A stretch of DNA of 64,000 nucleotides from Hemiscyllium ocellatum (lineage: Eukaryota): assembly GCF_020745735.1 (NCBI RefSeq), contig NC_083408.1:29046484-29110483 (forward strand), given 5' to 3'. The notes below the pieces were generated by a model. It worked only from the letters and a program-made list of their open reading frames with translations, was not told the origin of the DNA and searched no databases. This document shows positions 1 through 60,679 of the stretch, in pieces. Both the position numbers and the translations under genes were made by a program. Each line of letters begins with the position of its first letter. Position 1 is the first letter of the stretch.

Positions 1-181
1 AAGAGGCTCCTGGGACGATTGTCAGCCGGACATTACCGCCCAACTAGGAAGGCCTCAGCTCAGCACTCAAGGCCCAATCTCAGACCCCGTGCTCCTGGCG
101 GAATCTCCCTGCGTGGTGAGCGCTCTGTGGACAAACAGGTTCCCGCCTCCTGACGGTCTTACTAGACCAATGAAAGTGGGA

Positions 182-295
182 GTAAAAAGTGAGGTCTGCA
201 GATGCTGGAGATCAGAGCTGAAAGTGTGTTGCTGGTTAAAGCACAGCAGGTTAGGCAGCATCCAAGGAACAGGAAATTCGACGTGGCCCGAAACG
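182..295 (-). mobile_element. Penelope-like element terminal-repeat fragment
   Basis: 182-284 is nearly the reverse complement of 15013-15115. It breaks off at the hammerhead position. Confidence 0.7.
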
Positions 296-649
296 AAAGT
301 GGGAATAGAGCGAGGAACGGAATGAAAAGTGCCTGGATAGGGAGTCAATGACCATAGACCTCAGTCTGAAAGCGAAATCGATTGAAAAAGAAACGAGACT
401 GAAACCAATAGCTGAAATAGCAAGGAAACAAAATGAGGCGAAAGTTAGTGGGGAGAATCACATCATCACGATGTCTCCTATCTCCAGCTCACCAACTCTA
501 TCACCAGCCTTCCCTCTGGTTCGATTCTCCACCTTGCTCCTTTTCCTTGCTGGAAATCTGGTACCTCTCTCACTCCTAACAGCTCCACCCAACTTTCTTT
601 GATGACCCTCTTCTCCCACCATAGATGCTACCTAACCTGATGATTACTG

Positions 650-1664: not shown

Positions 1665-1845
1665 TAGGTGAGTATTGCAGGGGCTGGAGATCAGAGTCGG
1701 GAGTGTGGTGCTGGAAAAGCACGGCAGGTCAGGCAGCATCCGAGGAGCAGGAGAATCGATGTGTCAGACATAAGCGTAACGTCAATTCTCCTGCTCCTCG
1801 GATGCTGCCTGACATGCTGTGCTTTTCCAGCAACACACTCTCGCC
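1665..1845. mobile_element. Fold-back pair of Penelope-like terminal repeats
   Basis: 1701-1762 and 1779-1840 are inverted copies of the same repeat tail. Confidence 0.75.
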
Positions 1846-2416
1846 ACACACCGTTAATACCGAGTTTGGGGGAGAATTATAAAACAAAACACAGGGTTTC
1901 AAAGAGATGCCATTCAAAGACATTCGCCGAATGCTTCTACACTGTGATAACAGCACCATCTCCACCCATCCCTCCCTCCATACCCCTCTCTCCCTGCTAT
2001 GGTGAACCCCTGAGCCAGCAGTTGGTAAAACAGCATTTCGGGCGAAGGCGCAGACAGCATGGATCAATAAGTTCAAGAGGAGTGGGCTGCGGCAAGAAAG
2101 TCATATCGAGCACTCCGCATGCAACCGGTCAGATTGCCTCGTTAGTTTCACCACTTTTCTAACTCGCGTTGAAGACACCTCGGAGAAAGAAAGCGCGTGG
2201 AAGCGAAATTGCTCGTATTTTAACGCGCATGCTCGAAATATATCCCAAGCGGACCCTCCAGGGTCTGGGGACTGTCGGGAGATGTTTACTCTCTGAAGAG
2301 GGGGAGGAGGATTATTAGAAATCTGAGAACAAAAACAGAGTGGGAACGTTACTTTTGATTTCATGTGAGATTCAAGGCGCTGCCTCTCTTCCGAGCGGCC
2401 AATGCTGCAAACTTAC

Positions 2417-2593
2417 AGCGTCCCAGACATACGCCGACACGCCCAGATTAGCGCCCAGAATTTGGGCGATCTTCAGATTATACCCGCAGAACTCAAAGTT
2501 ATTATGTGTGATGTAGCAGCTCGGAGAGTAACTCTCGTCGTATGGAGCGTCGTTGCTGGAACGTTCGGAGGACTGCCTCGTCGTAGTTGTCAT
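2417..2593 (-). CDS. EEF1AKMT3: EEF1AKMT3/METTL21B-like methyltransferase, paralog A, coding exon 1 (59 aa; remaining exons presumably left of the window)
   Basis: ATG at 2593 on the minus strand. Translation MTTTTRQ...NNFEFCGYNLKIAQILGANLGVSAYVWDA matches the F-x-F-C-G-x-x-L-x-I...LGVxAxVWDA start of EEF1AKMT3. Ends in phase 0 at donor GCT|GTAAGT, the same position as in paralogs B-D. Confidence 0.88.
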
Positions 2594-10660: not shown

Positions 10661-10854
10661 GCTGAACTGTTGGTGTATAAGGGTATATTGAGTTTGTTAT
10701 AGATTAGATCCATGAGTAAGTTCCTTAAAATTCTGCACTTATAAAATGGTCAAAACACTTTAAGTAGCGGCAGTTCAAAGAGTTCCCAAATGTAACTATG
10801 AGTTCAGAGTTAGGGGTGTGAAGACCATAAAATGGCAGTTTCCCTTCACTTTAT

Positions 10855-11162
10855 GGGCGGCACGGTGGCACAGTGGTTAGCACTGCTGCCTCACAGCGCC
10901 TGAGACCCGGGTTCAATTCCCGACTCAGGCGACTGACTGTGTGGAGTTTGTACGTTCTCCCCGTGTCTGCGTGGGTTTCCTCCGGGCGCTCCGGTTTCCT
11001 CCCACAGTCCAAAGATGTGCGGGTCAGGTGAATTGGCCATGCTAATTTGCCCGTAGTGTTGGGTAAGGGGTAAATGTAGGGGTATGGGTGGGTTGCGCTT
11101 CGGCGGGTCGGTGTGGACTTGTTGGGCCGAAGGGCCTGTTTCCACACTGTAAGCAATCTAAT
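10855..11162 (+). mobile_element. HE1-type V-SINE, full length and young
   Basis: A box (tggcacagtgg), B box (ggttcaattcc), central V-domain (tgtgtggagtttg...ggtttcctccggg...) and a tail ending aatctaat. Confidence 0.9.
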
Positions 11163-14067: not shown

Positions 14068-14199
14068 ATGAGTAGCTTGGCGGAAAGCAACCCCCCTTTG
14101 GAATTGGAGGAGAAGAACTATGACTTTGGCGAACACAGTTTGAAGATCTCCACCTTTAAAGGAGCGTACCTAGGCGTTTCGGCTTTTGTCTGGGAACCT
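14068..14199 (+). CDS. EEF1AKMT3: EEF1AKMT3-like paralog B, coding exon 1 (44 aa)
   Basis: MSSLAESNPPLELEEKNYDFGEHSLKISTFKGAYLGVSAFVWEP, donor CCT|GTAAGT in phase 0. The exon opens at an acceptor (ttttttttccctttgaaacAG, exon start 13973), and there is an in-frame stop upstream of the ATG. Confidence 0.9.
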
Positions 14200-14839
14200 G
14201 TAAGTGTAGCAGCCGATTGCAACACAATGTTTGGGTTTGAAAGCATACTTCCTAACCAGTGTGCAACTAATTTGCTGGATGATTTGACGTGGATGTGCAT
14301 AGCATTTGAGGACCTTTCACTGGTTCTGCCTATATTGCTCGCAAGACAAAGCTTTTCCCTGTGGCTCGGTACACGTGACAATAAATTCAATTCAATTCCA
14401 TTGTTTATGGTCCAGACCAGAAGTCATTCATTCGTCCCCACACACTGAACACATCGGCTCTTCTTTTCTTCCTCGCGGGTTTAGCTGCTTTCTCTTGAAT
14501 GCTCTGGTCGTGTAAATAATACATTTCAAGTGAAGACATCCTGACGAAGCCTACAGTAGTGACCTGCTTGAGCGGATTCCGTTCCCACTCACTTCGCTCT
14601 TTTCCAGCTAGATCATTCTTTTTTTTGACAGTTTGGACCTCTTCATTCTGATATAATCCCTGAAAATCCTTTTTAAAACCTTCTCCTTTATTAACGTAGA
14701 ACTAAATTCACGGAGGCCTAGCAAATGGCCTCGAAGGTTCTGTGCATGTTTTACCCTGACCTCTGTTCTTCGCAATTCTATCCTCACCCAAGAATGAACA
14801 TTAGAGTCCTGTGCATTTTTCTGCTACAGTGTTGTTATT

Positions 14840-15116
14840 AATCTTCTTCCTGACCTCTCCGCCCCCACCCCACTCCGGCCTATCACCCTCACCTTGACCT
14901 CCTTCCACCTATCACATCTCTATCGCCCCTCCCCCAAGTCCCTCCTCCCTACCTTTTATCTTAGCCTGCCTGGCACACTCTCCTCATTCCTGATGAAGGG
15001 CTTGTGCCCGAAACGTCGAATTTCCTGTTCCTTGGATGCTACCTAACCTGCTGTGCTTTAACCAGCAACACATTTTCAGCTCTGATCTCCAGCATCTGCA
15101 GACCTCACTTTTTACC
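14840..15116 (+). mobile_element. Penelope-like element 3' terminal repeat carrying the hammerhead
   Basis: C/T-rich segment, hammerhead and tail, homologous to the end of the RT/GIY-YIG element at 58755-60679. Confidence 0.75.
14986..15021 (+). ncRNA. Minimal type-I hammerhead ribozyme motif (Penelope-associated), intact core
   Basis: ATTC-CTGATGA-A-GGGC-ttgt-GCCC-GAAAC-GTC-GAAT: stem I ATTC/GAAT, core CUGAUGA and GAAA, stem II GGGC/GCCC, GUC cleavage triplet. Confidence 0.75.
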
Positions 15117-15925
15117 CTTGATATTTTGAATCACTTGTTCATCTGCACCCTTACACCTCTCAATTTATCCACCTTGCTTTAAGGAGTACAAAGTTTCCTT
15201 ATTTGTATTCTTCCTTCCAAGATGCATTGTCGGGTGCTCATCTACATTATTTGACAGTTGCATTCCTATTGTGTGAAATTTATTTACGTCACCCTGTACT
15301 GTCCCAAAATTCTCCTTTCTTTACAATGCAACCCACGAATTGACATATCCCACAAATTTTTAACCATACATTCTGATTCTCGATTCCAAACCATTTAGAG
15401 TATGTAAACAATAGACACTTCAGTCTACTGCGTTACCCTAGTTCCTTTTCTCTCTTTCAGGAAGATGAATTTATGAACTCTGCTATATTTTGACTTTTTA
15501 AAGCTGTTTAATATCATACCTGATTGGCGGGGGGCAGATTAGTTTGCTAACCACATATCCAATGTTAAGCAACAGCTTCTGCATTTGTTTCCGTTCCTTC
15601 GTTGGAAAAGAACTCACATTAATCAAATGCCAATTTGTTAACCAGTTTACGCTACTCATCTTCTGGTTAAGCATTCTGATTGTAATAATGCTTTGCCTTG
15701 TCTTCACTATCTTTCTTTGAGATATAGAAATGCATATTTTGTTGTGTTTGATTCCTTGATGGGTAACCTTTGCCCTTTTAAAGGACAGGACAAGTTGCAT
15801 TTAAATAGCGACTTCCATGCAGAAAAGTGACCAAATATGGTTAAAAACCATTTCATCAATAGAACTGAGATCAAGGCACTCAGCAGGTATCACAACGGAT
15901 GACTGAAAGCAGCAATGGTCAATGA

Positions 15926-16130
15926 GGTGGGCTCAGTGGTTAGCACTGCTGCCTCACAGTGCTAAGGACCCAGGTTCAATTCCAACCGCGGACAATTGTC
16001 TGTGTGGGTTTCCTGCCGCAGGCTAGCTGGATTAGCCATGGTCAATGCGCGGTTACAGGGACGGGGAACGGATCTGGATGGGATGCGTTTCTGAGGGGCT
16101 GAATGGCCTGCTTCCACGTTGTAGAGATCT
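15926..16130 (+). mobile_element. Degenerate HE1-type SINE
   Basis: gctcagtggttagcactgctgcctcacag...ggttcaattcc head with internal deletions. Confidence 0.7.
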
Positions 16131-16182
16131 TAAGGTAGTTTCTTTAGAACCTTCACAAAGTGGGTGCTAGCGAAGGCGTGTG

Positions 16183-16315
16183 CCCTAATGAAGGGCTTTA
16201 TGTCCGAAACTTCGATTCTCCCGCTCCTCGGATGTTGCCTGACCGGTTGTGCTTTTCCAGCGCCGCATATGTTTGACTCTGATATCCAGCATCCGCAGCC
16301 CTCACTCCCTCTCCT
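16183..16315 (+). mobile_element. Penelope-like terminal-repeat fragment with mutated hammerhead
   Basis: ctaatgaagggctttatgtccgaaacttcgattctcc...gcttttccagc. Confidence 0.7.
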
Positions 16316-16641
16316 TATTTCATAAGCAAATGATCTAAGTAGACTTGAAATAATAAAAAGGGCAGTTTGAGCATATAAAGATTCCTTACTGCAACCAAAC
16401 CAAAAAGAAGTGGCCTCTGATCAGGGCAACAGTGAGCTGCGCGAAGCTGCCTGCCTGGTTCCCTGAACACCACCGATGGCGGTAATGCCGCTCTCCTTGG
16501 GAAACCGGGGTGACAGCATTCCTCTCAGTGACAGGGTGAGGTTGCACGCAGTCGAGAGGATCCCTAGCTGAGGTGCTGAACTGTTCCGCGAAGAGCTCCC
16601 GAGTTCAGCATGGATCTGGGTCAGAGTTAAGGAAAGGTAGA

Positions 16642-17310
16642 TGCGCGCGCGCTTGTGTGTGCGCGCGTGTATCTGTGTGTGTGTGTCGGGGGGGGGGGGG
16701 GGTCTGTGTATGTGTGTGTGCGCGCGCGCGAGCGGAAGGAAAAGTGCGGGACAGAGAGTCAGTGCGTGGGTGGAGTGAGTGAAAGACAATGGAGTGAGTA
16801 AACAGGGGTGAAAAGTGAGGTCTGAGTGAGAGGGGTGTGAGTGAATGAGTAGGTCGCGTAGAGTGAGTGGATTGTAGAATGAGTGAGGATGAAGTGAGAA
16901 GGAATAGGTGAATGAATGGTGCAAGCGAATGAGCAAGGAATATGCAATGAGTGATTGAGGGTAAGGTGAGTAAAGGTGCATGCGAGCGGTGTGTATGTGC
17001 ATCAGGGATGACTGAGTTAATCAGATGGAGTAGGGATTTATATGGGAAGGAGAAATGCATGAGAGTGATTGGATGGGGGGGAAGATAATGAGGGAGTGGG
17101 AGTGTGAATGTATGAGGGAGAACTAGTGAGGGCGAATGGGGAGTGAGAGTAGGGTGTGGGACTGTCTGTAGAGAAAGGATTGTGATGGGAGTGAGCTGGC
17201 GTGTGTATGTTAGAGAAGGTGAATGAAGGATTGTGAGTGTTTTTACGTTTGAAGGATGGATTGGGGGCAGGGGATATGGAGTGTGTTTGAAAACTTTGTA
17301 CTGAGTGAAC
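16642..17310 (+). repeat. (GC)n/(GT)n/poly-G followed by a long GT/GA-rich low-complexity tract
   Basis: Seen directly. Explains the spurious His/Thr/Leu/Pro-rich minus-strand ORFs 16421..17348. Confidence 0.9.
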
Positions 17311-18099
17311 AAAATAAACACCTGAACTGAAAGCCCGCTTGTTTGCAACTTCCATTTTTATATGAATTCCAGAGAGACAGTCTTGGAGTGTGTGTCAGTA
17401 GAGGTGAAAGCAAGGCCAGTGTTAATTAAATTCAACTCACAACTTAGGCGCAGCTTTCCCCCCACTCCCCTTCCTGATAATCAGGGCTGGGCTCTAGTCT
17501 ATCTCCTCACAATCCTGTTTGTTTCCTGCAAAGGCCAGTTTTAATTAACTATTTCTGCTTCTTGGCATTTTAATAGTTATTTTCATTAATTACTCAGTTA
17601 TTTACATTGACAATTTATTGTTTAGCAATTATCTAATTTAAGTTAATTTTCAATGTTCTGTCAAACTTTGTCATTATGAAACTTTGCCCCTGCTTCCTCT
17701 CACCCTCAAAAAGAGAAAACTTGAAATATAATCTTCCATGCAAAATGTTTGGCAAGTTCGCCCTGTGTTCAGACAACATTCTGGGTGTTAATGAAGCCAT
17801 GTGCTCCAGAACATCCGTCTCCTAGCCAAGGTATTTCACTACAGTCACAATACAGCAATCTACCAGGCATTGCAGAAAACTTCCAAGGCAATTTCTGGCC
17901 ACAAAGAAAGGGCCTGATTCAACCTGGCCAATTACTGCCCCATCAGTCAACTCTTGATTATCAACAGTGTGATAGAAAGGACCATCATTAGTATTATTAA
18001 GAGCTTCGTATCAAACAATAAATTGCCAGTGCCACTCAGCTCCTGAACAAGTTATACTCTTGTGTAAATATCACGAAGGGAGAACAATCTATGTGGTGA

Positions 18100-18910
18100 T
18101 GTGACACTGACCAATTCCAACAGCCAGGTAGCATTTGACCGAATATGAGGTCAAGGAGGTAGAGAAAGTCTGCAGTCAATGAGAATAATTTCCCACTGGC
18201 AAGCATAATTACTAACATGAAGGACGGTAATTCCAGTTTGTTGAAATTAAGTCATCTCAGTCCTAGGACAAGGCACCAGGAGTTCTTCAGAACAATGTCC
18301 TCTGCCCAAATATATTCAGTGGGGTTGTCACGAGGCATGCCTCCGTCATAAGGTCAGGAGAAGAATTGTTCATTCGTGATGTGATAGTGTTCCAAAGTAT
18401 TCGTGACTCTTCAAGTCTATGTTCATATGGAACAAAACCTGGATAATTTTCAGACTTGTGCTGGTAAGTGACAGGTAATATATACACTCAATAAGTACCA
18501 GGTAATGACCAGCTCCAAGAAAAGTGAATCTAATAATTTTCCATTATCTTAAACATTACTCTATCCACCATTGGCCAACAATGAAACACTGTACCACCAA
18601 CACAATGCACTGCAACAACTCTCCAAGGTTCCTTTGACACCACCTTCCAAACCCACGACTGCTTCCACCTAGAAATACAAGGGCAGCATGGAGCTAAACA
18701 CGATCTCAAGTTCTCCTACAAGCCTTATCCGAACATTTATCACTGTTTCTTCCTTATCAGTTTCAAATTCCTGAAACTTTTTTCCTACTAGAACTATGGG
18801 TTCACCTACACCACCAGGACTGCAACGGTCCTAGAAGGCAGATGATCACCTTTTCGAAGGCAAATGGGATGAGCCAAAAATGTTAGCTGCCGGTGACACC
18901 TAAGTTCTGT
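18100..18910 (+). mobile_element. Old CR1/L2-group LINE remnant
   Basis: Similar to the opposite-strand remnants at 31440-32110 and 56350-57850 (aagtggcaagtaacatt..., ccttccaaacccacgac). Confidence 0.5.
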
Positions 18911-20244
18911 GAAAAAAACTTTTTTTAAGGAAGTAAGATACCTTTAACTCTTTTATTGACATCGATAGTGATTCTGCTTCTGACCCTCAATTTGCTGTGT
19001 CATTTCTTTAGTCATGCTGGCTTTAATTAATGGTGCGCTACACTTCTTCCACTCCTGTCTTTGTGGTTACATCACCACCTTCCATAAACAATTGCCAGTA
19101 CGGTTTATTTTATGCTAGAATTATTGCTGCCACACATAGTTCAGGTTCCTCGATTGTGCTTTGAATACTGTGTGCAGTGCCGTACAGTTTAATCTTATCT
19201 TTATAGTTGTTCCTGCACTCTCATTTTTAACAGCTTATTCCTCTATGAGATAAGTTAATATTCCATGTACATTTACTGTATCCTTGTCCCTTACCTTGAC
19301 CTGATTTTTATCTCATTTCCTAATTCTTTCCTCTCCAGACTATGCAATTTGCACACGGCCATTCTCCTTTCTAGTTTAACTTTCTATCAACCTCCATAAT
19401 TATCCCAGTTCATTGAATTAGAAATATGGATAGGAAATTGATTGACAGGAAACAGCTAAAAAATGGTTAATGGATATCTTAGACTCGAGGAAAGTGTGTA
19501 TTGGAATTCCCAAGGGATTGGTATTGGGAATTTTGCATCAGTTTTCGATCTGCTGCCTATGTAACGATTAACACTGGCTTCATGTAATCTATCATACTGT
19601 CTTTTTACTTTGTTCCATACTTCTGGAGTTTCTGTAACAGGAATAACCCCTCCCCCACCCTGCAAAATCCATTATCGCCCATATCATGTGCTCCAACATT
19701 GATTACTCCAAATAGACTTCCCATTTCTTCTGCAGTTCGTCTTCAATTTTCCTACCCTTTTTTGTCTTTTCGATCTGTTCCAATTTGAAGTCAGAGCAGG
19801 GGCTGAACCGAAACAGAACGCCCTACTTCTGAAAGAGTTGTGCACGTTACTCTTGGATATTGACAATCTCTACTTTGTTTGGTATCGTGAATCTCCTGGG
19901 CCATATGCCATTCGGATGTTTTTAGACTTTGGGGTCTCGCGGGATTATGAGGTTCCGACATCAGCTGAATCTCTTTGGTAGCAATAAAAGTGATGGTAGC
20001 TTGACTGAGACATCAGAACCGTGAGTTAACGTGAAATGTTTTCACGGTCAAAACTGTGCCATGTTTTGGAAAGGATTTCCATATCTCTAATCTAGAAGGC
20101 TAGGAGTGCCACTGCTTTTACTTGCGCTGTGATGGTATTCCCACATTATTGAACTGATTTGCGAAGATTGTCAACCCATTGGCACCAATGTGTTTTGATC
20201 ATTGCAAATCTATTAATATCCAAGTGTAAATCCGTTTGCGATAA

Positions 20245-20400
<156 letters not shown>

Positions 20401-21118
20401 TAAATATCAGGAACAAAATAAAACTGGCGATGTTTCTTTAGTTATTCATGCAAATATTGATAAAAGGCTCTGGCAAAAGCCTCAGGTTTTGAAATGTTGC
20501 CATTACTTTCGCCACATTTGACGCCATGTTGGAGTCTTCAACAATTTCTGTATTAATTTCGATAGGGAAGGCTAATTTGTTATCCAATTTCAAGGCTTTG
20601 GAGCAATCTTACAATTGATACTAGTGAGGCTAATGGACGTTCTAATAATCGTGTTCCTGCGCCCTGTACTGTTCTTCGTCCGTTTTATTCATTAGGGTCG
20701 ATGGGGTTGAGCAGCCTACAATAGCAAACGCTGTAGTCTAATATTTTGAAACACCCTATGAAATGCTCACAAGATGAGCGTATTACAAAATGCTGGGGTA
20801 AGTCAAACAAACGGATGAATTATCCAACGCGCTGATACGTGCATGTAAGGCGAGTGGACAGTGCTTTCGAGAAGAATTGATTCTTCTTATTAGGGATATG
20901 ATTTTGGAAAGATCTGATTACACTTGATCTTCCTCTGAAGCTTAAGTTGCAGCTATGACACATAGAGTAGGTGCATGCAGCTTCTGTCTGGCTTTTGGGT
21001 TCAGTCATTAGGAGCCCATAGCCAAGTGTTGCAATTCATTGAGTGAGAAATCTGCATTACTTACCTTTTAATACGAGGCAGTGCTCAGATAATGATGTGA
21101 CATTATTGTTTTTACCAG

Positions 21119-21513
21119 GTGGAGATGTCACGTTGACGGACAGATCCTATGTTTTGAACCAAATAGAATACAACGTGCAAGCTAACATTCCAGCCAGCAG
21201 CAGACACCGTTCATCAATCCGGGCCCTGGCTTGGGGTGACGATCAGTGCAACTTTCCAAACGACTTTGATTATATTCTGGGTTCAGATATTGTGTACAAC
21301 CCCTCGCAATTTCCTAGTCTTTTGCAGACACTGTTGTACCTCTCCACGGACAAAACTATTGTTTATATGTCTTCTAACATGGCGGCCAGAGAAGGCGCCA
21401 TCAATTTTCACGAGGACCTCTTACCCAAGCAGTTTAACAGCGAAATACTTCATACAAGTGGAAGTAATTGCATTTACAAAGTGACTAGAAAACACCCGCG
21501 CCATGGGCACTAA
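21119..21513 (+). CDS. EEF1AKMT3: EEF1AKMT3-like paralog B, coding exon 3 (spliced protein 212 aa)
   Basis: GDVTLTD...RALAWG...FDYILGSDIVY (DxxY motif of the METTL21 family)...TAA. Acceptor tttttaccAG in phase 1, compatible with exon 2. 132+112+395 = 639 nt open. Confidence 0.95.
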
Positions 21514-23532: not shown

Positions 23533-24074
23533 CTAGACAAACCATCTAGGGTTATGGGAAGGGTAAGATTGATTGCAGGTGTTGCAGACAAGAAAGTGAG
23601 GTCGAAGCTAATTTACAAGAACAGAGGCCGAAATGTTAAACCGCAAGTGCTTTATTAAAGAGTTGTTTATTCTCCAGGCAACAAAGTTCGACGAAGCAGT
23701 TTCTCGGCCCAAAAGTGTCCCAGTGACGTCACCTTTGCGTGATCGGGCGCTTACATTTCCAGTTCACTATACTGATACAAATACACAACAGAAGCGGCAA
23801 TCAAATCAATCATATTCTTTGTGAATCGTGGACCGAGAACTAGGGGGCTGAAGACGATTTTCTGCTTCAACTTATATATTATATAAAGTTCGCTAATATA
23901 TTTGAATTATGAATTTAGTCTCAGTAACTTTGAACCACTGAACTGCTGGATTGTCATACAAATCTAATTATTCCACTGACTGTCTATTTTGGAACAAGTG
24001 CTGAGAGAGCCAACAAGAGGCAAACACTGATCTTATCTCGCCCTATCATTCTGTAGGGCTAAGGATCCCTAACG

Positions 24075-24505
24075 TGTGGAAACAGGCCCTTCAGCCCTAC
24101 AAGTACACACCGACCTTCCGAAAGGCAACCCACTCCCAATTCCTGATGAAGGTCTTATGACCGAAACGTCGATTCTCCTGCTCCTCGGATGCTGTCTGAC
24201 CTGCTGTGTGTTTCCAGCACCACACTACCGTGACCTACAATTTACTCCTGACTCATGCACCTAAACTACACATCCCTGAACACTATGGGCAATTTAGCAT
24301 GGCCATTTTGCCTAACCTGCATATCTTTGGATTGTGGGAGGAAACCGGAGCGCGCGGAGTGAACCCATGCAGACACGGGGAGAATGTGCAAGCTTCTCAC
24401 AAAGTTCGTCACCTGAGGCTGGAATCAAACCCGGTCCCTAGCGCTGTAGGGCAGCAGTGCTAGCCACTGAGCCACCGTGTCGGCCCCACTGAGCCACCGT
24501 GTCCC
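24075..24505 (-). mobile_element. HE1-type SINE containing an inserted Penelope tail (24138-24228)
   Basis: SINE sequence resumes after the insert. The head motif ccactgagccaccgtgtc is tandemly duplicated. Confidence 0.8.
24138..24174 (+). ncRNA. Minimal type-I hammerhead ribozyme motif, intact core, variant stem II
   Basis: aaTTC-CTGATGA-A-GGTC-ttat-GACC-GAAAC-GTC-GAtt. Confidence 0.7.
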
Positions 24506-36999: not shown

Positions 37000-37537
37000 G
37001 GTATGGTGTCACAATGGTTAGCACTGCTGCCTCACAGCGCCAGAGACCCGAAAGAAGACTAATAGTTTTAGGAAAGTCTGAGACTAGTAAAGTTTGGTGT
37101 TAACAGGCATTTGTTTACTGGTGTACCCAGAGCACAGATTATTCTTTATAACTGAAATGTAATAATTAGGGAGAAAAATGATATTTGGAACTTTATTGTA
37201 GGAGTGCACGAATGTTGAAATCGAATGTCTCTTATGGAGGATTTTAAAGATACCGCAGCCCAAGTACACGGTCCGTTTGCAGTCTCCTTAAATGAGGGAG
37301 AAGGTGCTTCTTCAGAAGAATTGTGTGGAGTTTGCACATTCTCCCTGTGTCTGCGTGGGTTTTCTCCGGGTGCTCCGGTTTCCTCCCACAATCCAAATAT
37401 GTGCAGGTTAGGTGAATTGGCCATGCTAAATTGCCCATAGTGTTAGGTGCAAGGGTAAATGTAGGGGAATGGGTCTTCGGAGGGTCGCTGTGGACTTGTT
37501 GCGCCGAAGGGCCTGTTTTCGCACTTTAAGTAATCTA
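37000..37537 (+). mobile_element. HE1-type SINE head (37000-37050) and body (37322-37537) separated by ~270 bp
   Basis: Both pieces match 10855-11162. The intervening and following sequence is degenerate CR1-like. Confidence 0.7.
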
Positions 37538-39219: not shown

Positions 39220-39390
39220 ATGACCACCGCCAGCTGCTCGCAGAATTCCAACGACGACGACATCATGGACAAGATTCAGCCCTCGACCTATTACATGAAT
39301 CAGAACAACTTCGCCTTCTGCGGCTACTGCTTAAAAATCGCTCGGAACACGAGCGCTAACCAGGGTGTGTCTGCTTATGTCTGGGACGCA
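39220..39390 (+). CDS. EEF1AKMT3: EEF1AKMT3-like paralog C, coding exon 1 (57 aa)
   Basis: accATG in good context. MTTASCSQ...NNFAFCGYCLKIARNTSANQGVSAYVWDA, donor GCA|GTAAGT. Confidence 0.92.
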
Positions 39391-40479
39391 GTAAGTTCAT
39401 TAACTGGTCAGATCCAAGAAAAGCCGGTCTGCCACCCTTATGTACGAGTTAATTTTAAGAATTTGCCATCTACTTTTCAATTGCTCAGAAACTTTCGATT
39501 TACAAAGAGTTCAGCAAGTTGTAATGTCTGCTGGAATCCAGCGCCTTGGCGTGTTGGATTTGGGTGGGTGCAGGGTCCGAGGGAGGTATGGTCGCAGCTA
39601 GGGAATTGTCGGCCTCCTATCTCCATCCCGGTACATACGGATCGGGAAGAGACGTTCACGGCAATTCAGGACCTTAAGTGTGGGGACCATAGCCAGCAAA
39701 CATTACCACGTGTCCTTGCGAGGTTTCTCGGGCACTCTCCCTAAGGCCATGGCTGAAATAGCAAAGGGAAGATGGATAGGGTGGAGAGTTGGGGGCGGGG
39801 GAGATGGGGCCGGGGTGGGAGGGGAGGGGGCGTTTGGGCATAATTGAAACGCAACTGTGCTTTTGATCTCCATCTCCAGCCACGTTCTCTTCATCATTCC
39901 CTTTTGGATTCCCTTTTCGACTCTACCTGCATCAGCTCAACTTCTTAATGAGACCAAAGGACATGCCACCCTCACGATGGCTGACAGCGGCAGATCGTGG
40001 GATTTTCACCCCAGGTACCCTTGACCCCAACTGGACTGTGAAACGTCTGAGTGGCGCAAAATGGGGAGGAGTGATGGATTTTGCTGTCCCGCCATCCTGC
40101 TCTCTAACGCCCGTAGCTCCGGTAAAAGCCAGCCCCAAATGCATTGTCTATCCTGTGCATGAATTCCTCACAGACCTTTGACAGGTCTTGCTCATAGCAA
40201 AGGCTAGACTTTTCGAACTGGTGAAATAACTTGAGCTCAGAAGTGTCGCATTTTTTTTTCTTGCCGAAGTTGCTGAACCATGCTGTCTTACAGTCAGCCT
40301 CTGGTGACATGCCCTGAGCAGCTATTTAAAAAGGAAACCCCGGTTCCAAACACCTACGGAATCCAAGGATACTGATGACAAATCCGCTTATATCTTCACC
40401 ACCGCATCATGTCGTGTCATGACCTCCGGCTAACGTTCACGGGTTTGGGTTAAGCAGCACATATACAAGTGCCTTCTTC

Positions 40480-40590
40480 GGTACAGTGGCAGTGTCCCTA
40501 CCGCTGGACCGGGAGGCCCGGGTGCATGTCCCACCTGCTCCAGAGTTGTGTAAGCACATTTCTGAACTAGTTGATTGGGGAAAAAAATAC
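40480..40590 (+). mobile_element. Short second-family tRNA-derived SINE-like repeat
   Basis: Matches 10548-10660. Confidence 0.55.
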
Positions 40591-40788
40591 TTAATTTTGA
40601 AAAGACACAATTAATGGAAAGTATGTACTTCCTGAGTCAGCACTGCAGCAAGCTACACATCAAGTCAGCGGGTTAGACCTGATGCGACGAAAGTTGCCAG
40701 ATGATAACATTTGTTCCCAGTGCCCCCCCCCCCCCCCCATCTCCAGAGGAAGTCGCTCGTATCCGTGACCCATATTGATTTGGGGTAA

Positions 40789-40974
<186 letters not shown>

Positions 40975-41769
40975 TAACAGATGGCTTGTAAACGACTTTT
41001 GCTATTTTGTTGAATGCTAGCCATATAAAAATAGCTTTGTGAAGGAGGGAAAACGTGTTAGGAGGATTGTACCGACGCACTTGTGTGTGTTGGAGGGTGA
41101 CAATGAAGAAGAATAGAACACTGTAGTTGATCATTCAAAGGCGGAAAACCTCCTAGCCCGCCCCCCTCCTTTACCCTATAGCAAGTTTCAGAGTGACTGT
41201 AAATCCACAGTACATTCTAACAACCTGCCCACTCGCTTCTATATATTTAACATTGACCATTTCAAAGATGAAAACTCCTACCTTTGTAATATACTGCATG
41301 TGACACCATAGGAACAACATTGGTGTCGAATACAAAACAATATCCAAATACCAGTGATATGATGTAACTATGTCATGGTCTGTGGCCATCGAACACGTTG
41401 AGCTTGTAAATTGGAGTTAAGAAAAGTAGTAAAGCAGAGCGAGACGTTCAGTCTCAGTGCAGATGATAACCAAATATTTTAATGTTCATGTTAGATATTG
41501 CATTGTGCGATTATCAGAGATGACAAACTTCAAAAAGATGAGATGAACAGTCACCGTTTTTCTTACAGCTGTGAACTTTACTCGATCCAATAATATCTTT
41601 AAAATCATGCACGTGTCTTGATCGAGTAAAATGGTGAGAGCTGATTCTTCTGAATGGTTATTATTGAAAACGCGCATGTTTAGGATAATTGACAAAAATC
41701 ACGAGAGATATTAGGAGCTTTTACCTCACTTCCTTTCCACAACATACCACATGAAAAGCTGGTAGAAAC

Positions 41770-43190
41770 AGTGTCAACGGTGACTTTCAGGAACCCACAT
41801 CCTCCAACCTCATAGTCTGGGAACCCCACACCACCTGATTCTACCTCCTACCCAACATCCACAAACATGACTGCTCCAGTCGACCAATTGTCTCAGCCTA
41901 CTCCTTCCCCACCGAACTTATATCTGCATACTTTGATACCATCCTTTTCCCTTTAGTACAGCAACTCCCAACCTATGTTCAGGGCACCAGCCACGCCTTC
42001 CCCCTCCACCTCCTCCATGACCCTCCTTTCCGCAGCCCCCAATGCCTTATCTTCACCATGAACATCCAATAACTGTACACATCTATCCACCATGACAAAG
42101 GCCTCTGAATCCTATATTTCTTCCTCTCACGCTGACCCAGCCAGTACCCTTTCACTGACACTCTCATTCGACTGGCTGGACTGGTCCTCACTCCCCACAA
42201 CGTCTCCTTCCAGTCCTCCCCCATTCTCCAAACCAAAGGGATAGCCATGTGCACTCGCATGGGCCCTATCTATGCCCGCCTCTTCATCGGGTATGTGAAA
42301 TTGGTCCATCCTCTGCAGCTACATTGGCATCATTCCCCACCTTTTATTCCATTACATCAATGACTGTATTGACGCTACCTCATGTTCCCGCAAGGAAGTT
42401 GAACAGTTCATCAACTTCACAAACACTTTTCACCCCAAATTCAAGTTCACCTGGACCATCTCAGCCACCTCCTTTCCCTTTCGAGATCTCTCTATCTCCA
42501 TTTCCGGCAACTGACTCAACATGTACAACCACTACAATTCCACAGACTCCCACAGATATCTAGTCAACACCTTCCCCCCCCCCCCCCCGACTCTGCCTCC
42601 TGTAAAACCACTATCCCTTAGTCCCAATTCCTCTAACTCCACCGTATCTGCTCCCAGGAAGACCAATTCCACCGTAGAATATCCCAGATGGCTTCCTTCT
42701 TCAAAGACCACAATTACCCACCCCACGTGGTCGACAATGCCCTCCAGTGCATCTTTTCCACTTCCTGCACCTCTACCCCTGACCACCACCCCTCCAACTG
42801 AAACAAGGACAGAACCTTCCCCCCCCCCCACCCCCATACTCACCTTCTACCCCACTAACCTCTGGATACATTGCATGATTGTCCACATTTGTGCCACCCA
42901 CAAACATGCCCTACTATCAGAGAGATATTTCCTTCCCACCTGTATCTGCGTTTCAGAGGGACCATTCCCTCCTTGGCACACTTGTGAGGACCACACCACC
43001 CACCAACTCACCCTCTCCTCCATGCCATTGGAAGAAGTGCAAAACCTGGGTTCACCCAGGCCCCAAAGGATCCTTCCACATCCATCAGAAATTTATCTGT
43101 ACTTCCACACATTTCATCTACTGCACCCTTTGCATCCGATATTGTCTCCTCTACACTGGAGAGACGAGATTAACTTCCTTCCCGCGCACT
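41770..43190 (+). mobile_element. Decayed Penelope-like retroelement (RT + GIY-YIG) in intron 2 of paralog C
   Basis: G-I-A-M-x-T-R-M-G-P-x-Y-A-x-L-F (42239 onward), F-H-Y-I-N-D-C (YIDD-like), CLLYTGET (YIG-E-T-like). Many frameshifts. Confidence 0.8.
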
Positions 43191-43439
43191 TTAAAAATAA
43201 ATCAGACTTCCTTATTTAAACGATCGGAATTTACGTTCCGGTGAAGTGTTCCTTATTTAGAATAATGTCTGAGCATTTGCGTTAGGGGCATCTCGGTGCA
43301 TAATGATTCCAATTACTCAATTGAGTGAATCCCGGAATTCACCAGGACCTCACTGAGTACTGTGATCAAATAGCATAGTAGTGTGCTGTCAGAGTCAACC
43401 TTCAACGTGGATGAATAATTTCTCTCTTCGTCTTGTCAG

Positions 43440-45444: not shown

Positions 45445-45792
45445 CGACATCATGGCTCAGTGGTTAGCAATGCTGCCTCACAGCACCAGGGACCTGGGCT
45501 CGTTTCCCGCCTCGGGCGACTGACTGTGTGGAGTTTGCACATTCTCCCCGTGTCTGCGTGGCTTTCCTCCGGGTGTTCCGGTTTCCTCCCACAATCCGAA
45601 GGTGTGCAGTTTAGGTGAATTGGTCATGCTAAATTGCCCATAGTGATAGGTGCTTTAGTCGGGGTAAATGTCGGGTAGGGGAATTGATCTGGGTGTGTTA
45701 CGCTTGGAGGGTCGGTGTGGACAGGTTGGGCTGAAGGGAATCGAATCTAATCATCTCAGAACCCAATTTTATCTTGCCCTGTAAACTAGTCC
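45445..45792 (+). mobile_element. HE1-type SINE
   Basis: Matches 10855-11162. Part of the duplicated block. Confidence 0.85.
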
Positions 45793-47335: not shown

Positions 47336-47711
47336 GGATTCATGTACACCAATGCCTGAAACAGTATAGCCGGTTGAGTCAAAGTCCTGGAATTCCCTCC
47401 CTACCGGCATTGTGGGTCAACCGACAGCAAGGCGACTGAAGCGATGCAAGAAAGCAGCTCACCACTATCTTTTCAAGGGAAGCAGGGATGGGCTATCAAT
47501 ACTGGCCAACCAGCGAGTTCCAAGTCGTACAAATGCATTAAAAAAATCTTTGATCCCCTTGGCTATCAAAAACTTATCTATCTTAGTTTTAAATAATGTC
47601 AATGACCTGGTTTCACAACCTTCTGTGGCAATGAATTCCACAGATTCGCCGCTCTATAGCTAAAGACGTTTCGTCTTATCTCTAAAGGCCTAAAAAGTTG
47701 TGACATCAGGC

Positions 47712-47830
47712 GAAGGTGTGGTGTTGGAAAAGCACAGCAGGTCGGGTAGCATCCAAGGAGCAGGGAAATCGACGCTTCCGGCAAAAGTCCTTTATCAAGA
47801 ATGAGGCAGGGAGCCTCCAGGGTGGAGACA
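47712..47830 (-). mobile_element. Penelope-like terminal-repeat fragment, hammerhead degenerate
   Basis: gtgtggtgttggaaaagcacagcaggtc...gacgcttccggcaaaagtcctttatcaagaatgagg. Confidence 0.7.
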
Positions 47831-53872: not shown

Positions 53873-54142
<270 letters not shown>

Positions 54143-54545: not shown

Positions 54546-56349
54546 ATTTAACCCTATCTTCCTTTACCATCTGCATCATGTCCCCTGCCCTGTCTCTTTC
54601 ATTTTCATTTATCTCAAGTTGTGCCAGGAATGTAGGTCTACATTTTCCATAACGGTCAATATAATCCAATAAGTGGTCTCTGCCATGTCCTTTTTGTCCA
54701 CAGACCTACCAGTTCAAGTGTCCTATTAGGATGCCCATTCCCTAGAATTGTGATCTTTAGTTTCTCCCATATTCACCCTAATTTCATCTCCCAGTTTCGC
54801 TTGTCATTAGACCCACCACCTGCTTCCTTTACCATAATTCCCACTAAACTGCACATCACCAAAACTCACTCAGCACTTCCCATGTTAGAGAATAATGCTA
54901 GTAAGTTTCTCCTATTTTCCATCAGTCAACCTCATGTCTCTCCTCAGATACAGAAAAGAAAAACCTTAGCTCCTTGTCAATTCCCCTTTTCTCTCCCAAA
55001 ATTTGGTATCTCATTCTTGACTCCCTAATTCAGAACTATCATTCATGACTACCACGGTTCAATCCCTCCGATTAAGCTTCCACTACTGTCAATTGCCAAA
55101 ATTGTTCTGATCAAAGCCACAAATTATTGACTGCAGAAAACGTAAATGATCCTTCTGTGTCCTTCTTGTTCTGTCATCAGAATTGATGCACTTGACCAGT
55201 CCATCTTGCTCTTACCTGGTTTGATTATTAACAATCCAGTGGTAGACAGAATACATGTTACAATAATACAACAGTAACATTCCAAAAGTCTCAGCTGTTC
55301 TTTGGAACTGGAGACAGGTGTTATTGGCACTCACTATGGATCTAATCCTTGTTTTGTCTCTAACAATTACCACTCCTTTTGCCTTTTATCCTACAATTGT
55401 AATCTCTAAACATCTCTTATCATTTCACAAGCCCTATGTTCCACTTGTCTCTGCCACCTTTCAGCAGCACAATATCCCTGACTGTCCCATCTTGCTTCAG
55501 CTTCAAATAAAAATCATGCTGGAGTCAAAACATTAACTCTGTTTCTCTCTCCACAGATGCTGCCAGATCTGTTGGGTTTCTCAAGCAAGCCTCTTTTGAT
55601 TTCAGATTTGCAGCATACACAGTATTTTGTTTTCATTATTCATTTACAAAGAGTTTTCTTCCAGTTCCTGCAGCATAAACCTGGGTGTCCCCTGAGGGTC
55701 TATTCTTAATTCCTTCTGTTTTCTATTGACATACAGACTCACTAATACTATCCAAAATATGGCATTAATTTGTACATGCATGCTGATGACACCCAACTGC
55801 ACCTTACCACCACTTCACTTGGCTCCTTAACCACTGCAGAATTACCAGGCTGTTTTTGTAAAAATAAATTGAGCATTGCACGAGTGGAGAGTTCCTCCAA
55901 TTAAATATTTGGGAATTGCTGACAAAAATACACATTTTGTTCAAAAGTTTGTTTTGCATACATCTAGACATTGCATCAGAATGCAAATTCATATTGGAAC
56001 CAACATTTATACTGCTTGAAAGGAGAGTGCTGACTGGTTAGCAAGTTAACTCTATTTGGCAGAATCTTTATGATGGAGAATACCCCCAATAATGTAGGTC
56101 ATACATCCCAAAGACTGGTTGATCATATCAATCACCATGTCAATTCAACTATTTACTGCAAGCAAGATATTGAGATTTACCAATGAGCTCGTGCTTACAA
56201 AGGAAACAATGCGAGATGAGATTCTACAATTGGACAACAGTATCCTGATAATCCTGAATATAATGATGCTAATTCCAGGGAAGATTTGCACTGGCCATTT
56301 AATTGTCATTTGGGCATTCCAAATGTGATCTTGCCTGTGTGTATTTTTT

Positions 56350-57850: not shown

Positions 57851-58754
57851 TGAGTCAATACTGTACCTCCATTTCTACTATTGATTTCATTCCACAGCTC
57901 TAATTCTGCTCATAGGTCTCACAGTGTGTACTGCACTGCATCAAATTATTTTTACAGTCAGTGCACACACAATTGGCAGTAGGACCCTCATCAACCCTCC
58001 CTGTTCCCCCTCAAAAAAGTCAAACAATTTAGTTAATCACAATTTCCTTTAATACATCCATTCTCTCCCTCCTTCATTAATCTGGATTTATCTATATGAA
58101 TGTTATGTGGATTAGCTGGCAGGAGTATTTGCTAACATCTTTAAATGCTCCTTACTATGAGCTGAAATCCCTACCTGCTCTAAGAAGACCACCATCATCC
58201 CAGTGCCAAAGAAAATTCATGCAATATACCCCAATGACTATTGCCCAGTGTTACTAACCTCCATAATTATGAAGTGCTTTGAGAGATTAGTCATGGCTCA
58301 CATCAACTCTAGCCTCCTATGTTGCCTTGATCTTTTGTAATTTGTCTAACATTGCAACAGGTCAATGGCAGATGCCATCTCTCTGGTCCTACACTCATCT
58401 ATGGAATATCATGACAATAATGACACCTATGTCAGGTCTTACTTATTGACTACAGATATACCTTCAACACCATAATTTCAATCAAATTCGTCTCTGAACT
58501 GTGAGACCTTGGTCTCAGCTCCCCCTTCTGTAACTGGATCTTTGACCTCCTGACCCATACATTGTAATCAGTAAGAAGACATAACAACACCTCCTCCATG
58601 ATAATCCTCAGCACTACTGCTCTACAAGACTCTATACTCAGCCTCTTATTATACTATTTAAACATTCACGAATGTGTGATCCAAGTCTGCCTGAACTCCC
58701 TTTACACATTTGTTGATGATACCATTATAGGTCAGAACAATGATGAGGCAGAGT

Positions 58755-60679
58755 CAAGAGTGTAAGGCTGGAAAAGCACAGCAGGTCAGGCAGCATCTGA
58801 GGATCAGGAGAATTGACATTTTGGGTATCAACTGTTCATCAGGAATGAGGCATGTGGGCCAGGAGGGCTGAGAGATAAATGGGAGAGGCGTAAAGCTGTG
58901 GAAAGGTAGCTGAGGATGCAATAGGTAGATAAACATGGGGGAGAAGGTGATAGGTCAAAGATGAGGGTGCAATGGATAGTTGGGAAAGATGATGGGCAGG
59001 TCAAGAGGCAGTGCTGAGTTGGAGGCTTGGGATAAGGTGGGGAAGGGGAAATGAGGAAACTGGTGAAATCCACATTAATCTTGTGTGATGCAGGGTTCCG
59101 AGGTGGAAGATGAGGTGTTCTACCTCCAGGTGTCGGGTGGTTAGGATTTGGCGATGGAGGAGATCCAGGACCTGCATGTCCTTATGGAGTGGGAGGGGGT
59201 CTTATGTGTTCATCCATGGGGTGGTGGGGTTGGTTGGTGCAGATGTCCCAGAGGTGTTCTCTGAAACCATCCACAAGTTGGCGTCCTGTCTCCCTGATGT
59301 GGAGGAGACCACAATCAGGTGCAACAGATACAGTAGATGACATTTGTGGAAGTGCAGGTGAATCTCTGATGGATGTGAAAGAATCCTTTGACACCTTGGA
59401 CAGAGGTGAGGGGGAGGTGTAGGCGTAGACTTCGCACTTCTAGTGTTGTCAGTGGAAGGTGCTGGGAGTGCGATGTGGCCTGGTGGGGGTTGTGGATCTG
59501 GCAAGGGAGTCATGGAGGGAATAGTCTCTCCAAGATACTGATAGGGGTGGGAGAGAATTATATCCCTAATGGTGGGGTCTGTTTATAGCTGGTGGAAGTG
59601 GCGAATGATGATGCAATATATATGGAAGTTGGTGGGATGGAAGGTAAGGACATTGGGGGTGGGGTTTGGGTTCTGTCCTTGTTGCATTTGAAGGGGTGAT
59701 ATTCAAGGGCAGAGGTGTAGGAAGTGGAGGAGATGCACTGGAAGACATCATTGACCACTTGGGAGGGGAAATTTCAGTCTTTGAAGAAGGAGGCCATTTA
59801 CAATTTTCTATGGTAGAATTGGTCATCCTGAGAACAGATGCAGAGGAAGCTGAGGAATTGGGAATAAGGGATGATATTTTTACAAGAGGCGGGTGGGAGG
59901 AAGTATAGGGCAGGTAGTTGTCGAAGTCGGTGGGTTTGTAGTAGATGTCCATGGTTAGTCGGTCACTTGAGGTGGAGGTGGAGTGGTCCAGGAATGGGAG
60001 GGACATGTCTGAGATGGTCTAGGTGAATTTGAGGTCGGGGTGAAAGACGTGAAGTTGATGAACTGTTCAACCTTCCAGTGGGAGCACATGGTAGCACCAA
60101 TTGATGTAGCAGAGGAACAGGTGGGGGGTGGAACCAGTGTAAAGATGGACTGTTCCATGTACCTGAAAAAGCATAGCTGGGGACGATGCACGTGTCCATG
60201 GCTGCCTGTTTGGTTTGGAGGAAATGGGAAGATTTGAAGAAGTTGTTAAGGGTGAGGACCAGTTCAGACATGTAGATGAGGGTGTCAGTGGAAGGGTACT
60301 GATTGTGCTGGTGCAAGAGGGTGAAATGCAGGGCTTGAAGGCCTTCATCGTAGTGAATAGATGTGTGCAGGGACTGGATGTACATGGTGAAGATACGGTG
60401 TAGGGAGCTGAGGAAACAAAAGTCTTGGATGAAGTGAAGGGCATGGGTGGTGCCCTGAACATAGGTGGGTATTTGCTACACTAAGGGGGTGGGGGGGGGG
60501 GGGTGCGGGCTGGGTGGTGTCAAGGAATGCAGAAATGGGTTCAGTGGGACAGGAGGAGGCTGAGACAATGGGTTGACTGGGGAAGTCAGGTTTGTGAACC
60601 TTCAGTAGGAGATAGAATCAAGCAGTGCAAGGTTCTCTGACTATGAGGTTGGAGGTTGGGACTGTTAAGTTTGGAACTG
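58755..60679 (-). mobile_element. Decayed Penelope-like element (RT + GIY-YIG + terminal repeat)
   Basis: LPFLD, DIYYKPTD..NYLPYTSSHP and LLHIRETGRQLVDGFREHL motifs. The terminal repeat with a decayed hammerhead is at 58755-58850. Confidence 0.85.

What the first reader, a model, noticed from the sequence alone, without database searches (positions are those of the whole stretch)
14986..15021. Intact minimal hammerhead ribozyme in sense orientation inside an intron of paralog B
Seen: ATTC CTGATGA A GGGC ttgt GCCC GAAAC GTC GAAT. This gives a 4-bp stem I, the full catalytic core, a 4-bp stem II with tetraloop, and a GUC site (predicted cut after 15017). Helix III is reduced to the self-complementary ACGU. 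Known: Penelope-like elements carry such minimal type-I hammerheads, which are thought to cleave as dimers. Inference: it lies on the transcribed strand ~790 nt downstream of B's first coding donor, so it is made in every B pre-mRNA and could cut it co-transcriptionally.
Basis: partly seen in the sequence, partly recalled or inferred. Interest (0 to 1): 0.72.

Follow-up and report, generated by a model that had tools for sequence, protein, structure and literature searches.

The report
Penelope-type hammerhead relic in an intron
The 36-base hammerhead ribozyme motif is really there, but it is one copy of a common Penelope-type retroelement fragment that landed in the first intron of a methyltransferase gene, and the evidence does not suggest it cuts that gene's RNA to any meaningful extent.

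Summary
The letters at 14986-15021 are exactly as described. [quoted passage not shown] It is not a stand-alone feature. It sits in an interspersed repeat with 9 copies in the window, on both strands. The repeat shows PLE insertion hallmarks: 5' truncations, a common 3' end in two classes 36 nt apart (the optional PLE "tail"), a head-to-head hairpin doublet, and a 10-bp target duplication on a sister copy.

It does lie on the sense strand of intron 1 (14200-20265) of an EEF1AKMT3/METTL21B-like gene.

The proposed co-transcriptional cutting is not supported:
- Published PLE minimal hammerheads are inactive as monomers.
- The only other sense copy in the intron has a dead core.
- Predicted folding favours an inactive hairpin.
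- Copies decay freely (only 2 of 5 full copies keep the core).
- This copy looks intact because it is young (98% identical to a sister copy).

No Rfam hammerhead model matches. The scan has already noted this kind of element hundreds of times elsewhere in this genome. Verdict: an ordinary member of a known kind, of low interest.

The parts
14986..15021 (+). Minimal type-I hammerhead motif: helix I 14986-89/15018-21, core 14990-96, extra A 14997, stem-loop II 14998-15009, GAAA 15010-13, palindrome ACGU 15013-16, C17 15017; predicted cut 15017|15018
15018..15079 (+). Proximal 3' part of the retroelement copy. It is the best-conserved segment of the family and contains a predicted stem-loop UGCUG/CAGCA (15049-53 with 15063-67) followed by an AC-rich run. 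The short class of copies ends about here.
15080..15115 (+). Optional 36-nt 'tail' extension, present in copies A, B, C, G and absent in D, E, F, H. The end of the element is set by the end of the 98% match to the sister copy at 284-182.
   Evidence: compare PMC11167929
14841..14985 (+). C/T-rich upstream part of the same element copy (pLTR-like), homologous at about 66% to the copy at 58993-58847(-). The true 5' end is uncertain and may reach 14758.
14749..14757 (+). Possible upstream half of a target-site duplication, TTTTACCCT, repeated at 15110-15118. Weak: about 0.1 such matches are expected by chance, and it overlaps the last 6 nt of the element.
14068..14199 (+). First coding exon of the host gene (EEF1AKMT3/METTL21B-like paralog B), 44 codons, donor GTAAGT at 14200
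14200..20265 (+). Intron 1 of paralog B (6,066 nt); it holds the motif and one decayed sense copy
20266..20377 (+). Exon 2 of paralog B (SAM-binding motif ELGSGTG), acceptor AG at 20264-65, donor GTAAGG at 20378
21043..21513 (+). ORF containing the last coding exon of paralog B (Methyltransf_16 positions 68-160; PDB 4qpn METTL21B E=1.3e-25)
16170..16305 (+). Second sense copy of the family in the same intron. Its hammerhead is dead: CUAAUGA (G5->A) and ACUU instead of ACGU.
24126..24243 (+). Only other copy with an intact core (24139-24174). Stem II is GGUC/GACC and helix I has only 2 contiguous bp. It lies 2.6 kb beyond the stop codon of B, inside another repeat.
182..294 (-). Sister copy of the same young subfamily (98% over 103 nt from A15.1 on). 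It is 5'-truncated inside the hammerhead with a 9-nt inverted piece, and is flanked by the 10-bp direct repeat TCCCACTTTC (295-304 and 172-181).
1698..1843 (.). Head-to-head hairpin doublet of two truncated copies (65-nt arms, 91% complementary, 16-nt spacer inside stem-loop II)
47699..47818 (-). Decayed copy (core UUGAUAA, GAAGC, stem II mismatches)
58733..58993 (-). Decayed copy (all three CpGs of the motif mutated, stem II lost) with the upstream pLTR-like part
55549..55620 (+). Distant, strongly decayed relative of the tail (E=5.6e-5)

Best explanation
The motif is the ribozyme module of a dead, 5'-truncated copy of a Penelope-like retroelement, at least 275 bp long (14841-15115). The copy inserted, in sense orientation, into intron 1 of an EEF1AKMT3/METTL21B-like gene after the local gene duplications. 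In the active element, the hammerhead and the segment just downstream belong to the terminal repeat. The hammerhead is built to work only when two copies pair through the ACGU palindrome, swapping helices I and III, probably with help from the element's own protein. Reverse transcription starts at one of two internal sites downstream of it, which explains the shared 3' ends and the optional 36-nt tail (inferred from PAc). In this intron the motif is a lone passenger. It is transcribed with the pre-mRNA, mostly folds into a non-catalytic hairpin or pairs with flanking sequence, has no competent partner nearby, and is removed with the intron. It looks intact because the insertion is young, not because the host keeps it. 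Shown: the sequence anatomy, repeat membership, insertion hallmarks and gene context. Inferred: the link to an autonomous Penelope element, and the lack of meaningful cleavage.
For: Anatomy and non-randomness. [quoted passage not shown] Repeat family: 9 copies, and the consensus carries an intact hammerhead. 5' truncations and a common 3' end in two classes 36 nt apart match the optional 30-40 bp tail between two RT start sites described for PLEs. Further insertion marks: a head-to-head doublet; a 10-bp target duplication on the sister copy; no tRNA-like head. Youth: 98% identity to the sister copy. No in-situ selection: only 2 of 5 full copies keep the core, and the hammerhead columns depart from the majority as often as the tail columns, 14.3% against 11.2%. 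Not shared with paralogs: their intron 1 is about 1.0-1.5 kb and holds no copy. Poor prospects for cleavage: published monomer inactivity and protein dependence; a dead cis partner, an alternative fold and low helix I probability. Intronic copies of such elements are commonplace: 44% in Xenopus.
Against: The core is perfect, including three mutation-prone CpGs. This subfamily has a better helix I (4 contiguous bp) than the family consensus, which has a U-U mismatch. Nearest-neighbour energies ignore hammerhead tertiary contacts and co-transcriptional folding. Thousands of related transcripts, or a Penelope protein if expressed, could supply a partner or chaperone in trans. No RNA data for this genome were available. 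No Penelope RT/GIY-YIG ORF was found among the ten largest ORFs of the window, so the link to an autonomous element rests on architecture, literature and unchecked earlier scan notes. With five sequences, covariation is not significant (64-78 of 500 shuffles reach it).
Confidence: 0.75

Rival explanations
1. Conditional, low-level cleavage without a host function. The intronic copy is occasionally cut when it pairs in trans with another transcript of the same family, or when the Penelope protein is expressed. This yields a minor amount of cleaved intron with little effect on mRNA output.
For: The core is intact and the ACGU palindrome is shared by family members. Dimeric PLE hammerheads show some activity in vitro. 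The PAc hammerhead cleaves when its protein is added. Earlier scan notes report the family as very abundant in this genome (unchecked).
Against: The swapped homodimer is predicted 7 kcal/mol less stable than two misfolded monomers. The heterodimer with copy E scores -12.8 and with copy C -4.0. No in vivo ends were seen for PAc. From general knowledge, slow ribozymes in introns do not disturb splicing (hammerhead-in-intron experiments of Dye et al. 2006 and Fong et al. 2009; recalled, not checked here).
Confidence: 0.15
2. One reading: an active intronic ribozyme that cuts the B pre-mRNA co-transcriptionally and thereby lowers or regulates expression of paralog B.
For: Sense orientation, intronic position and intact core. 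Domesticated intronic hammerheads exist in amniotes.
Against: It lacks the loop-loop contacts and stable helix III of the domesticated intronic hammerheads. It is a lone monomer with a dead neighbour. The insertion is young and absent from the paralogs' introns. Family copies decay freely. Published data show monomer inactivity.
Confidence: 0.06
3. Not a ribozyme in practice. The conserved letters serve the retroelement as a hairpin or protein-binding site (the predicted two-helix hairpin UGAUG/CGUCG plus stem II), and the hammerhead resemblance has no catalytic consequence in this family.
For: The alternative hairpin is the predicted MFE for both intact copies. In vitro, hammerhead mutants did not affect PAc insertion.
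Against: Every one of the roughly 15 invariant hammerhead positions is present, together with the class-specific extra nucleotide and palindrome. The chance expectation is 0.01 per window. Stem II shows a compensatory change. Mutation and rescue of C3/G8 showed genuine ribozyme cleavage for a PLE hammerhead.
Confidence: 0.04

Closest known systems
Minimal hammerheads (min-HHRs) of metazoan Penelope-like elements (Cervera & De la Pena 2014, PMC4209133)
   Same: Type-I topology; full core; an unpaired nucleotide between A9 and G10.1; a G10.1-C11.1 pair; no loop 3, with a palindromic 15.x-16.x; a short open helix I; dispersed mostly as single motifs in truncated copies; dual motifs on opposite strands close together
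   Different: Stem II is only 4 bp here (6-8 bp in the Schistosoma and Drosophila examples). The link to an RT/GIY-YIG ORF was not shown in this window.
Poseidon element PAc of Anolis carolinensis (Frangieh et al. 2024, PMC11167929)
   Same: The hammerhead lies upstream of the internal reverse-transcription start region. There are two alternative 3' ends separated by a 30-40 bp optional tail, and an AC-rich stem-loop near the start sites (here UGCUG/CAGCA followed by an AC-rich run).
   Different: In PAc the hammerhead overlaps the ORF start. Here the reading frames that open in the motif close after 17-26 codons in the family consensus, so this tail does not obviously encode the ORF start. 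No sequence similarity was tested.
Animal non-LTR retrozymes (Cervera & De la Pena 2020, PMC7229834; Li, Clavereau & Pollet 2026 preprint)
   Same: Non-coding, hammerhead-bearing, PLE-related short repeats; monomer copies are spread evenly and often sit in introns
   Different: Retrozymes are head-to-tail tandem arrays that can release circular RNAs. This copy is single, and the nearest sense copy is 1.2 kb away and broken.
Conserved intronic hammerheads of amniotes (RECK, CTCL, DTNB; De la Pena & Garcia-Robles 2010, as reviewed in PMC6155905)
   Same: A type-I hammerhead on the sense strand of an intron of a protein-coding gene
   Different: Those have closed loops with tertiary contacts and are conserved across classes of vertebrates. 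This one is minimal, young, repeat-borne and not shared by the paralogs.

Membership tests
PLE minimal hammerhead (min-HHR) | Conserved core C3 U4 G5 A6 N7 G8 A9 ... G12 A13 A14 A15.1 ... U16.1 H17 | tested here: met
   all positions canonical, C17 at 15017
PLE minimal hammerhead (min-HHR) | [quoted passage not shown] | tested here: met
   A at 14997; G14998-C15009; criterion from PMC4209133
PLE minimal hammerhead (min-HHR) | No loop 3; positions 15.x-16.x palindromic, so that helix III forms only between two copies | tested here: met
   ACGU at 15013-15016
PLE minimal hammerhead (min-HHR) | Belongs to a within-genome consensus family with covariation in the stems | tested here: inconclusive
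   9 copies. One G-C to U-A, one C-G to U-A and one G-U in stem II, but with 5 sequences 64-78 of 500 shuffles reach the observed values.
PLE minimal hammerhead (min-HHR) | Lies in the terminal repeat of an element encoding RT plus GIY-YIG endonuclease | tested here: inconclusive
   No RT or GIY-YIG domain in the ten largest ORFs. The remaining 159 open segments were not scanned. Earlier scan notes of Penelope copies elsewhere in the genome were not checked.
PLE insertion signature | Variable 5' truncation, and a fixed 3' end with an optional 30-40 bp tail (two RT start sites) | tested here: met
   Short ends in D, E, F, H; long ends 36 nt further in A, B, C, G; criterion from PMC11167929
PLE insertion signature | Inverted (head-to-head) partial copies at the 5' end, and target-site duplication | tested here: met
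   65-nt inverted arms 1698-1762/1779-1843. 10-bp duplication and a 9-nt inversion on the copy at 182-294. For copy A itself there is only a weak 9-nt candidate.
PLE minimal hammerhead (min-HHR) | Self-cleavage as a dimer, abolished by core mutation | not testable with these tools
   Needs in vitro transcription; only nearest-neighbour energies were computed
Rfam hammerhead families (Hammerhead_1, _3, _II, HH9, HH10) | Covariance-model score at or above the gathering threshold | tested here: not met
   No hit at gathering on the whole window, and no hammerhead family even at E<=10 on 401 nt or 71 nt
Non-LTR retrozyme | Two or more head-to-tail copies, each with a competent hammerhead | tested here: not met
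   Single copy. The next sense copy is 1.2 kb downstream with G5->A and a broken palindrome.
Domesticated intronic hammerhead | Closed loops 1 and 2 with tertiary contacts; conservation at the orthologous or paralogous intron | tested here: not met
   Helix I is open and 4 bp. Paralogs C and D have short first introns without a copy. Orthologs could not be examined.

The most novel reading that the evidence does not exclude
Intact sense-strand Penelope hammerhead relics in host introns are cleaved in trans, as swapped dimers with abundant element transcripts and assisted by the Penelope protein, whenever the elements are de-repressed. A burst of Penelope expression would then collaterally cut the pre-mRNAs of many host genes, this methyltransferase paralog among them.
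Probability: 0.04. Interest if true: 0.7.

Novelty: new member of a known kind. Interest (0 to 1): 0.12.

Why it matters
If the motif did cut its host pre-mRNA, it would be an example of a retroelement ribozyme acting on a vertebrate gene, and possibly an early step towards the domesticated intronic hammerheads of amniotes. As it stands, it is a tidy textbook copy of a Penelope-type minimal hammerhead. It shows in one window the class features: an extra nucleotide after A9, palindromic helix III, an optional tail, hairpin doublets and target duplication. Its practical value is as a well-annotated control locus for end-mapping experiments. It is also a reminder that such motifs in this genome are repeat-borne and should be masked as a family before individual copies are flagged.

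Tried and rejected
- Rfam at gathering and at E<=10 on three nested ranges found no hammerhead family. I read this as the models not covering helix-III-less variants, not as evidence against the motif.
- Single-sequence nhmmer with the upstream (14400-14990) and downstream (15100-15700) flanks found no other copies. Unfiltered blastn was needed to see the low-complexity upstream homology to the copy at 58.9 kb.
- Covariation counting on the five full motifs went in the right direction but was not significant.
- Pfam on the ten largest ORFs found only the host methyltransferase and no RT or endonuclease. I listed 169 open segments of >=75 aa but did not scan them all.
- Exact-pattern scans for more copies outside the window were blank: two of the metagenome collection and one of the viral collection. 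These collections are unlikely to hold this host's DNA.
- Earlier-findings look-ups by sequence and by some word sets were blank.
- The paper by Lunse, Weinberg & Breaker on dimeric cleavage is not held, so it is cited only through the review PMC6765202.
- ARAGORN found no tRNA-like SINE head. The bacterial promoter/terminator scan is irrelevant to a eukaryotic intron.
- A third CTGATGA...GAAAC match at 51683-51707(-) has no convincing stem II and no family context, so I treat it as chance (absent).

Full report
**Observation.**
- In standard hammerhead numbering, helix I is 14986-14989 paired with 15018-15021.
- The core C3-A9 is 14990-14996, and a single extra A sits at 14997.
- Stem II is GGGC/GCCC (14998-15001 with 15006-15009), with a UUGU loop and a G10.1-C11.1 closing pair.
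- G12-A14 are 15010-15012.
- A15.1-C-G-U16.1 form the self-complementary ACGU at 15013-15016, and C17 is 15017. The scissile bond would therefore be 15017|15018.
- I wrote a descriptor for this architecture and ran it on both strands. It finds only this site in the window, and 200 dinucleotide-preserving shuffles average 0.01 hits.
- The 28-nt core string has a second, 3-mismatch match at 24143-24170, against none expected. A relaxed descriptor finds just these two.

**It is part of a repeat.**
- A profile nhmmer search finds nine copies of a unit of about 140 nt, on both strands: 293-190(-), 1788-1669(-), 1769-1859(+), 14969-15107(+), 16170-16305(+), 24126-24243(+), 47818-47699(-), 55549-55620(+) and 58864-58733(-) (alignments).
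- The family consensus carries an intact hammerhead.
- Five copies span the whole motif, and only two keep the core (15k and 24k). The 16k copy has G5->A and ACUU. The 58k copy has lost all three CpGs and stem II. The 47k copy has two core changes, GAAGC and stem II mismatches.
- Hammerhead columns depart from the majority as often as tail columns do, 14.3% against 11.2%. Genomic copies therefore decay without selection on the ribozyme.
- The copy in question is 98% identical over 103 nt to the copy at 284-182(-), with unrelated flanks. It belongs to a young subfamily, which is enough to explain its intactness.

**What kind of repeat.** Several features match Penelope-like elements (PLEs).
- The motif meets the criteria that Cervera & De la Pena (PMC4209133) give as emergent signatures of PLE minimal hammerheads: an extra nucleotide between 9 and 10.1, a G10.1-C11.1 pair, a palindromic 15.x-16.x with no loop 3, a short open helix I, and families with compensatory changes.
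- Stem II is GGGC/GCCC here and GGUC/GACC at 24k. With five sequences, however, the covariation is not significant.
- Copies are 5'-truncated at different points but share 3' ends that fall into two classes. D, E, F and H end just after an AC-rich run that follows a predicted UGCUG/CAGCA stem-loop. A, B, C and G end 36 nt further on.
- Frangieh et al. (PMC11167929) show that a PLE reverse transcriptase starts at two internal sites in an AC-rich stem-loop downstream of the hammerhead. They also show that the optional 30-40 bp tail of genomic copies is the stretch between those sites. The pattern here fits that PLE-specific signature.
- Two truncated copies form a head-to-head hairpin (arms 1698-1762 and 1779-1843).
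- The sister copy at 182-294(-) is flanked by a perfect 10-bp duplication and starts with a 9-nt inverted piece of stem II.
- There is no tRNA-like head.
- I did not find a Penelope ORF in this window. The link to an autonomous element therefore remains inferred. Earlier notes of this scan report abundant Penelope copies with the same ribozyme design elsewhere in this genome, but I could not check them.
- For copy A the verified extent is 14841-15115. A 9-nt repeat, TTTTACCCT, at 14749 and 15110 may mark the target site, but it is weak evidence.

**Gene context.**
- The window holds a cluster of EEF1AKMT3/METTL21B-like genes (Pfam Methyltransf_16; best solved relative METTL21B, E=1.3e-25).
- Paralog B has exon 1 at 14068-14199 with a GTAAGT donor and exon 2 at 20266-20377 with good splice sites. 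Its last exon lies inside ORF 21043-21513.
- Paralogs C and D have first introns of about 1.5 and 1.0 kb without any copy. The insertion therefore postdates the duplications.

**Would it cut?**
- A hammerhead whose helix III is only ACGU cannot close on itself. The active form is a swapped dimer, in which the core of one copy cuts the site of the other.
- Published tests found no detectable cleavage by single PLE minimal hammerheads and low activity for dimers (review).
- The PAc hammerhead cleaved only with its protein present and left no detectable RNA ends in vivo.
- Here the only other sense copy in the intron is catalytically dead and pairs poorly: the forced double hammerhead scores -4.0 kcal/mol.
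- The isolated motif is predicted to fold into a hairpin that pairs core UGAUG with CGUCG across the cut site (-11.4). The helix I + II fold scores -8.4, and the swapped homodimer -15.7 against -22.8 for two misfolded monomers.
- With 50-200 nt of native flank on each side, helix I has at most 3% pairing probability and stem II 5-28%.
- These energy models ignore tertiary contacts and kinetics, so they only lower the odds. Together with the literature, they make efficient co-transcriptional cleavage unlikely.
- From general knowledge (not checked here), slow ribozymes placed in introns do not prevent splicing.

**Comparison and novelty.**
- The element works like, and by sequence criteria is, a PLE minimal hammerhead.
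- It is not a member of any Rfam hammerhead family by score.
- It is not a retrozyme array, because it is a single copy.
- It lacks what defines the conserved intronic hammerheads of amniotes.
- Intronic copies of such elements are common: 44% of copies in Xenopus.
- This scan has already flagged the same kind hundreds of times in this genome, including the sister motif in this window.
- It is an ordinary new member of a known kind.

**What remains open.** Three things are unresolved: whether lone intact sense copies are ever cut in trans when Penelope elements are expressed; the exact 5' end and target duplication of this copy; and the direct link of this family to an RT-encoding parent.

Noticed in passing
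window 2420-2527(-), 14068-21513(+), 39295-43816(+), 52819-54025(+): A cluster of at least four EEF1AKMT3/METTL21B-like paralogs, three in tandem on the + strand and one first exon on the - strand. Intron 1 is 6.07 kb in B but about 1.5 and 1.0 kb in C and D. No third exon was found for D.
   Followed up: partly
window 1698-1762 and 1779-1843: Two truncated copies of the hammerhead family joined head to head into a 65-nt-arm hairpin (91% complementary). The 16-nt spacer falls in stem-loop II, as if the cDNA had snapped back there.
   Followed up: partly
window 172-304 (- strand copy): The sister copy is flanked by a perfect 10-bp direct repeat, TCCCACTTTC (295-304 and 172-181). It begins with GTTTCGGGC, an in-place inversion of GCCCGAAAC from the 3' half of stem II.
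   Followed up: partly
window 24060-24400 versus 724-961: The 24k hammerhead copy interrupts another, SINE-like repeat whose uninterrupted relative lies at about 724-961. The 5' junction falls at ATTCC|TGATGA, where the host repeat has CCCATTCC. Helix I and C3 of that copy may therefore come from the target by microhomology.
   Followed up: partly
window 47767-47802 (-): The core of this decayed copy reads UUGAUAA, i.e. C3->U together with G8->A. This is the core covariation reported for Schistosoma PLE hammerheads. The copy is otherwise broken, so this may be coincidence.
   Followed up: no
window about 62270-62440 (+): An open segment with the LINE-type reverse-transcriptase motif GLPQGLVLGPLLF..YVNDL, probably a non-LTR element fragment unrelated to the hammerhead family.
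   Followed up: no
window 45607-46073 and 48400-48881: Direct repeats 98-100% identical and spaced about 2.8 kb apart: a recent local duplication, or two very young copies of a larger repeat.
   Followed up: no
window 10853-11160, 37250-37537, 45440-45651, 48231-48557, 60811-61146: Another abundant interspersed repeat family (about 300 nt, 65-90% identity among copies), partly adjacent to the hammerhead copies. Not identified.
   Followed up: no
window 51683-51707 (-): CTGATGAG...GGGAAAC matches the loose core pattern but has no proper stem II, no palindrome and no repeat context. It is most likely chance (0.41 expected per window).
   Followed up: partly
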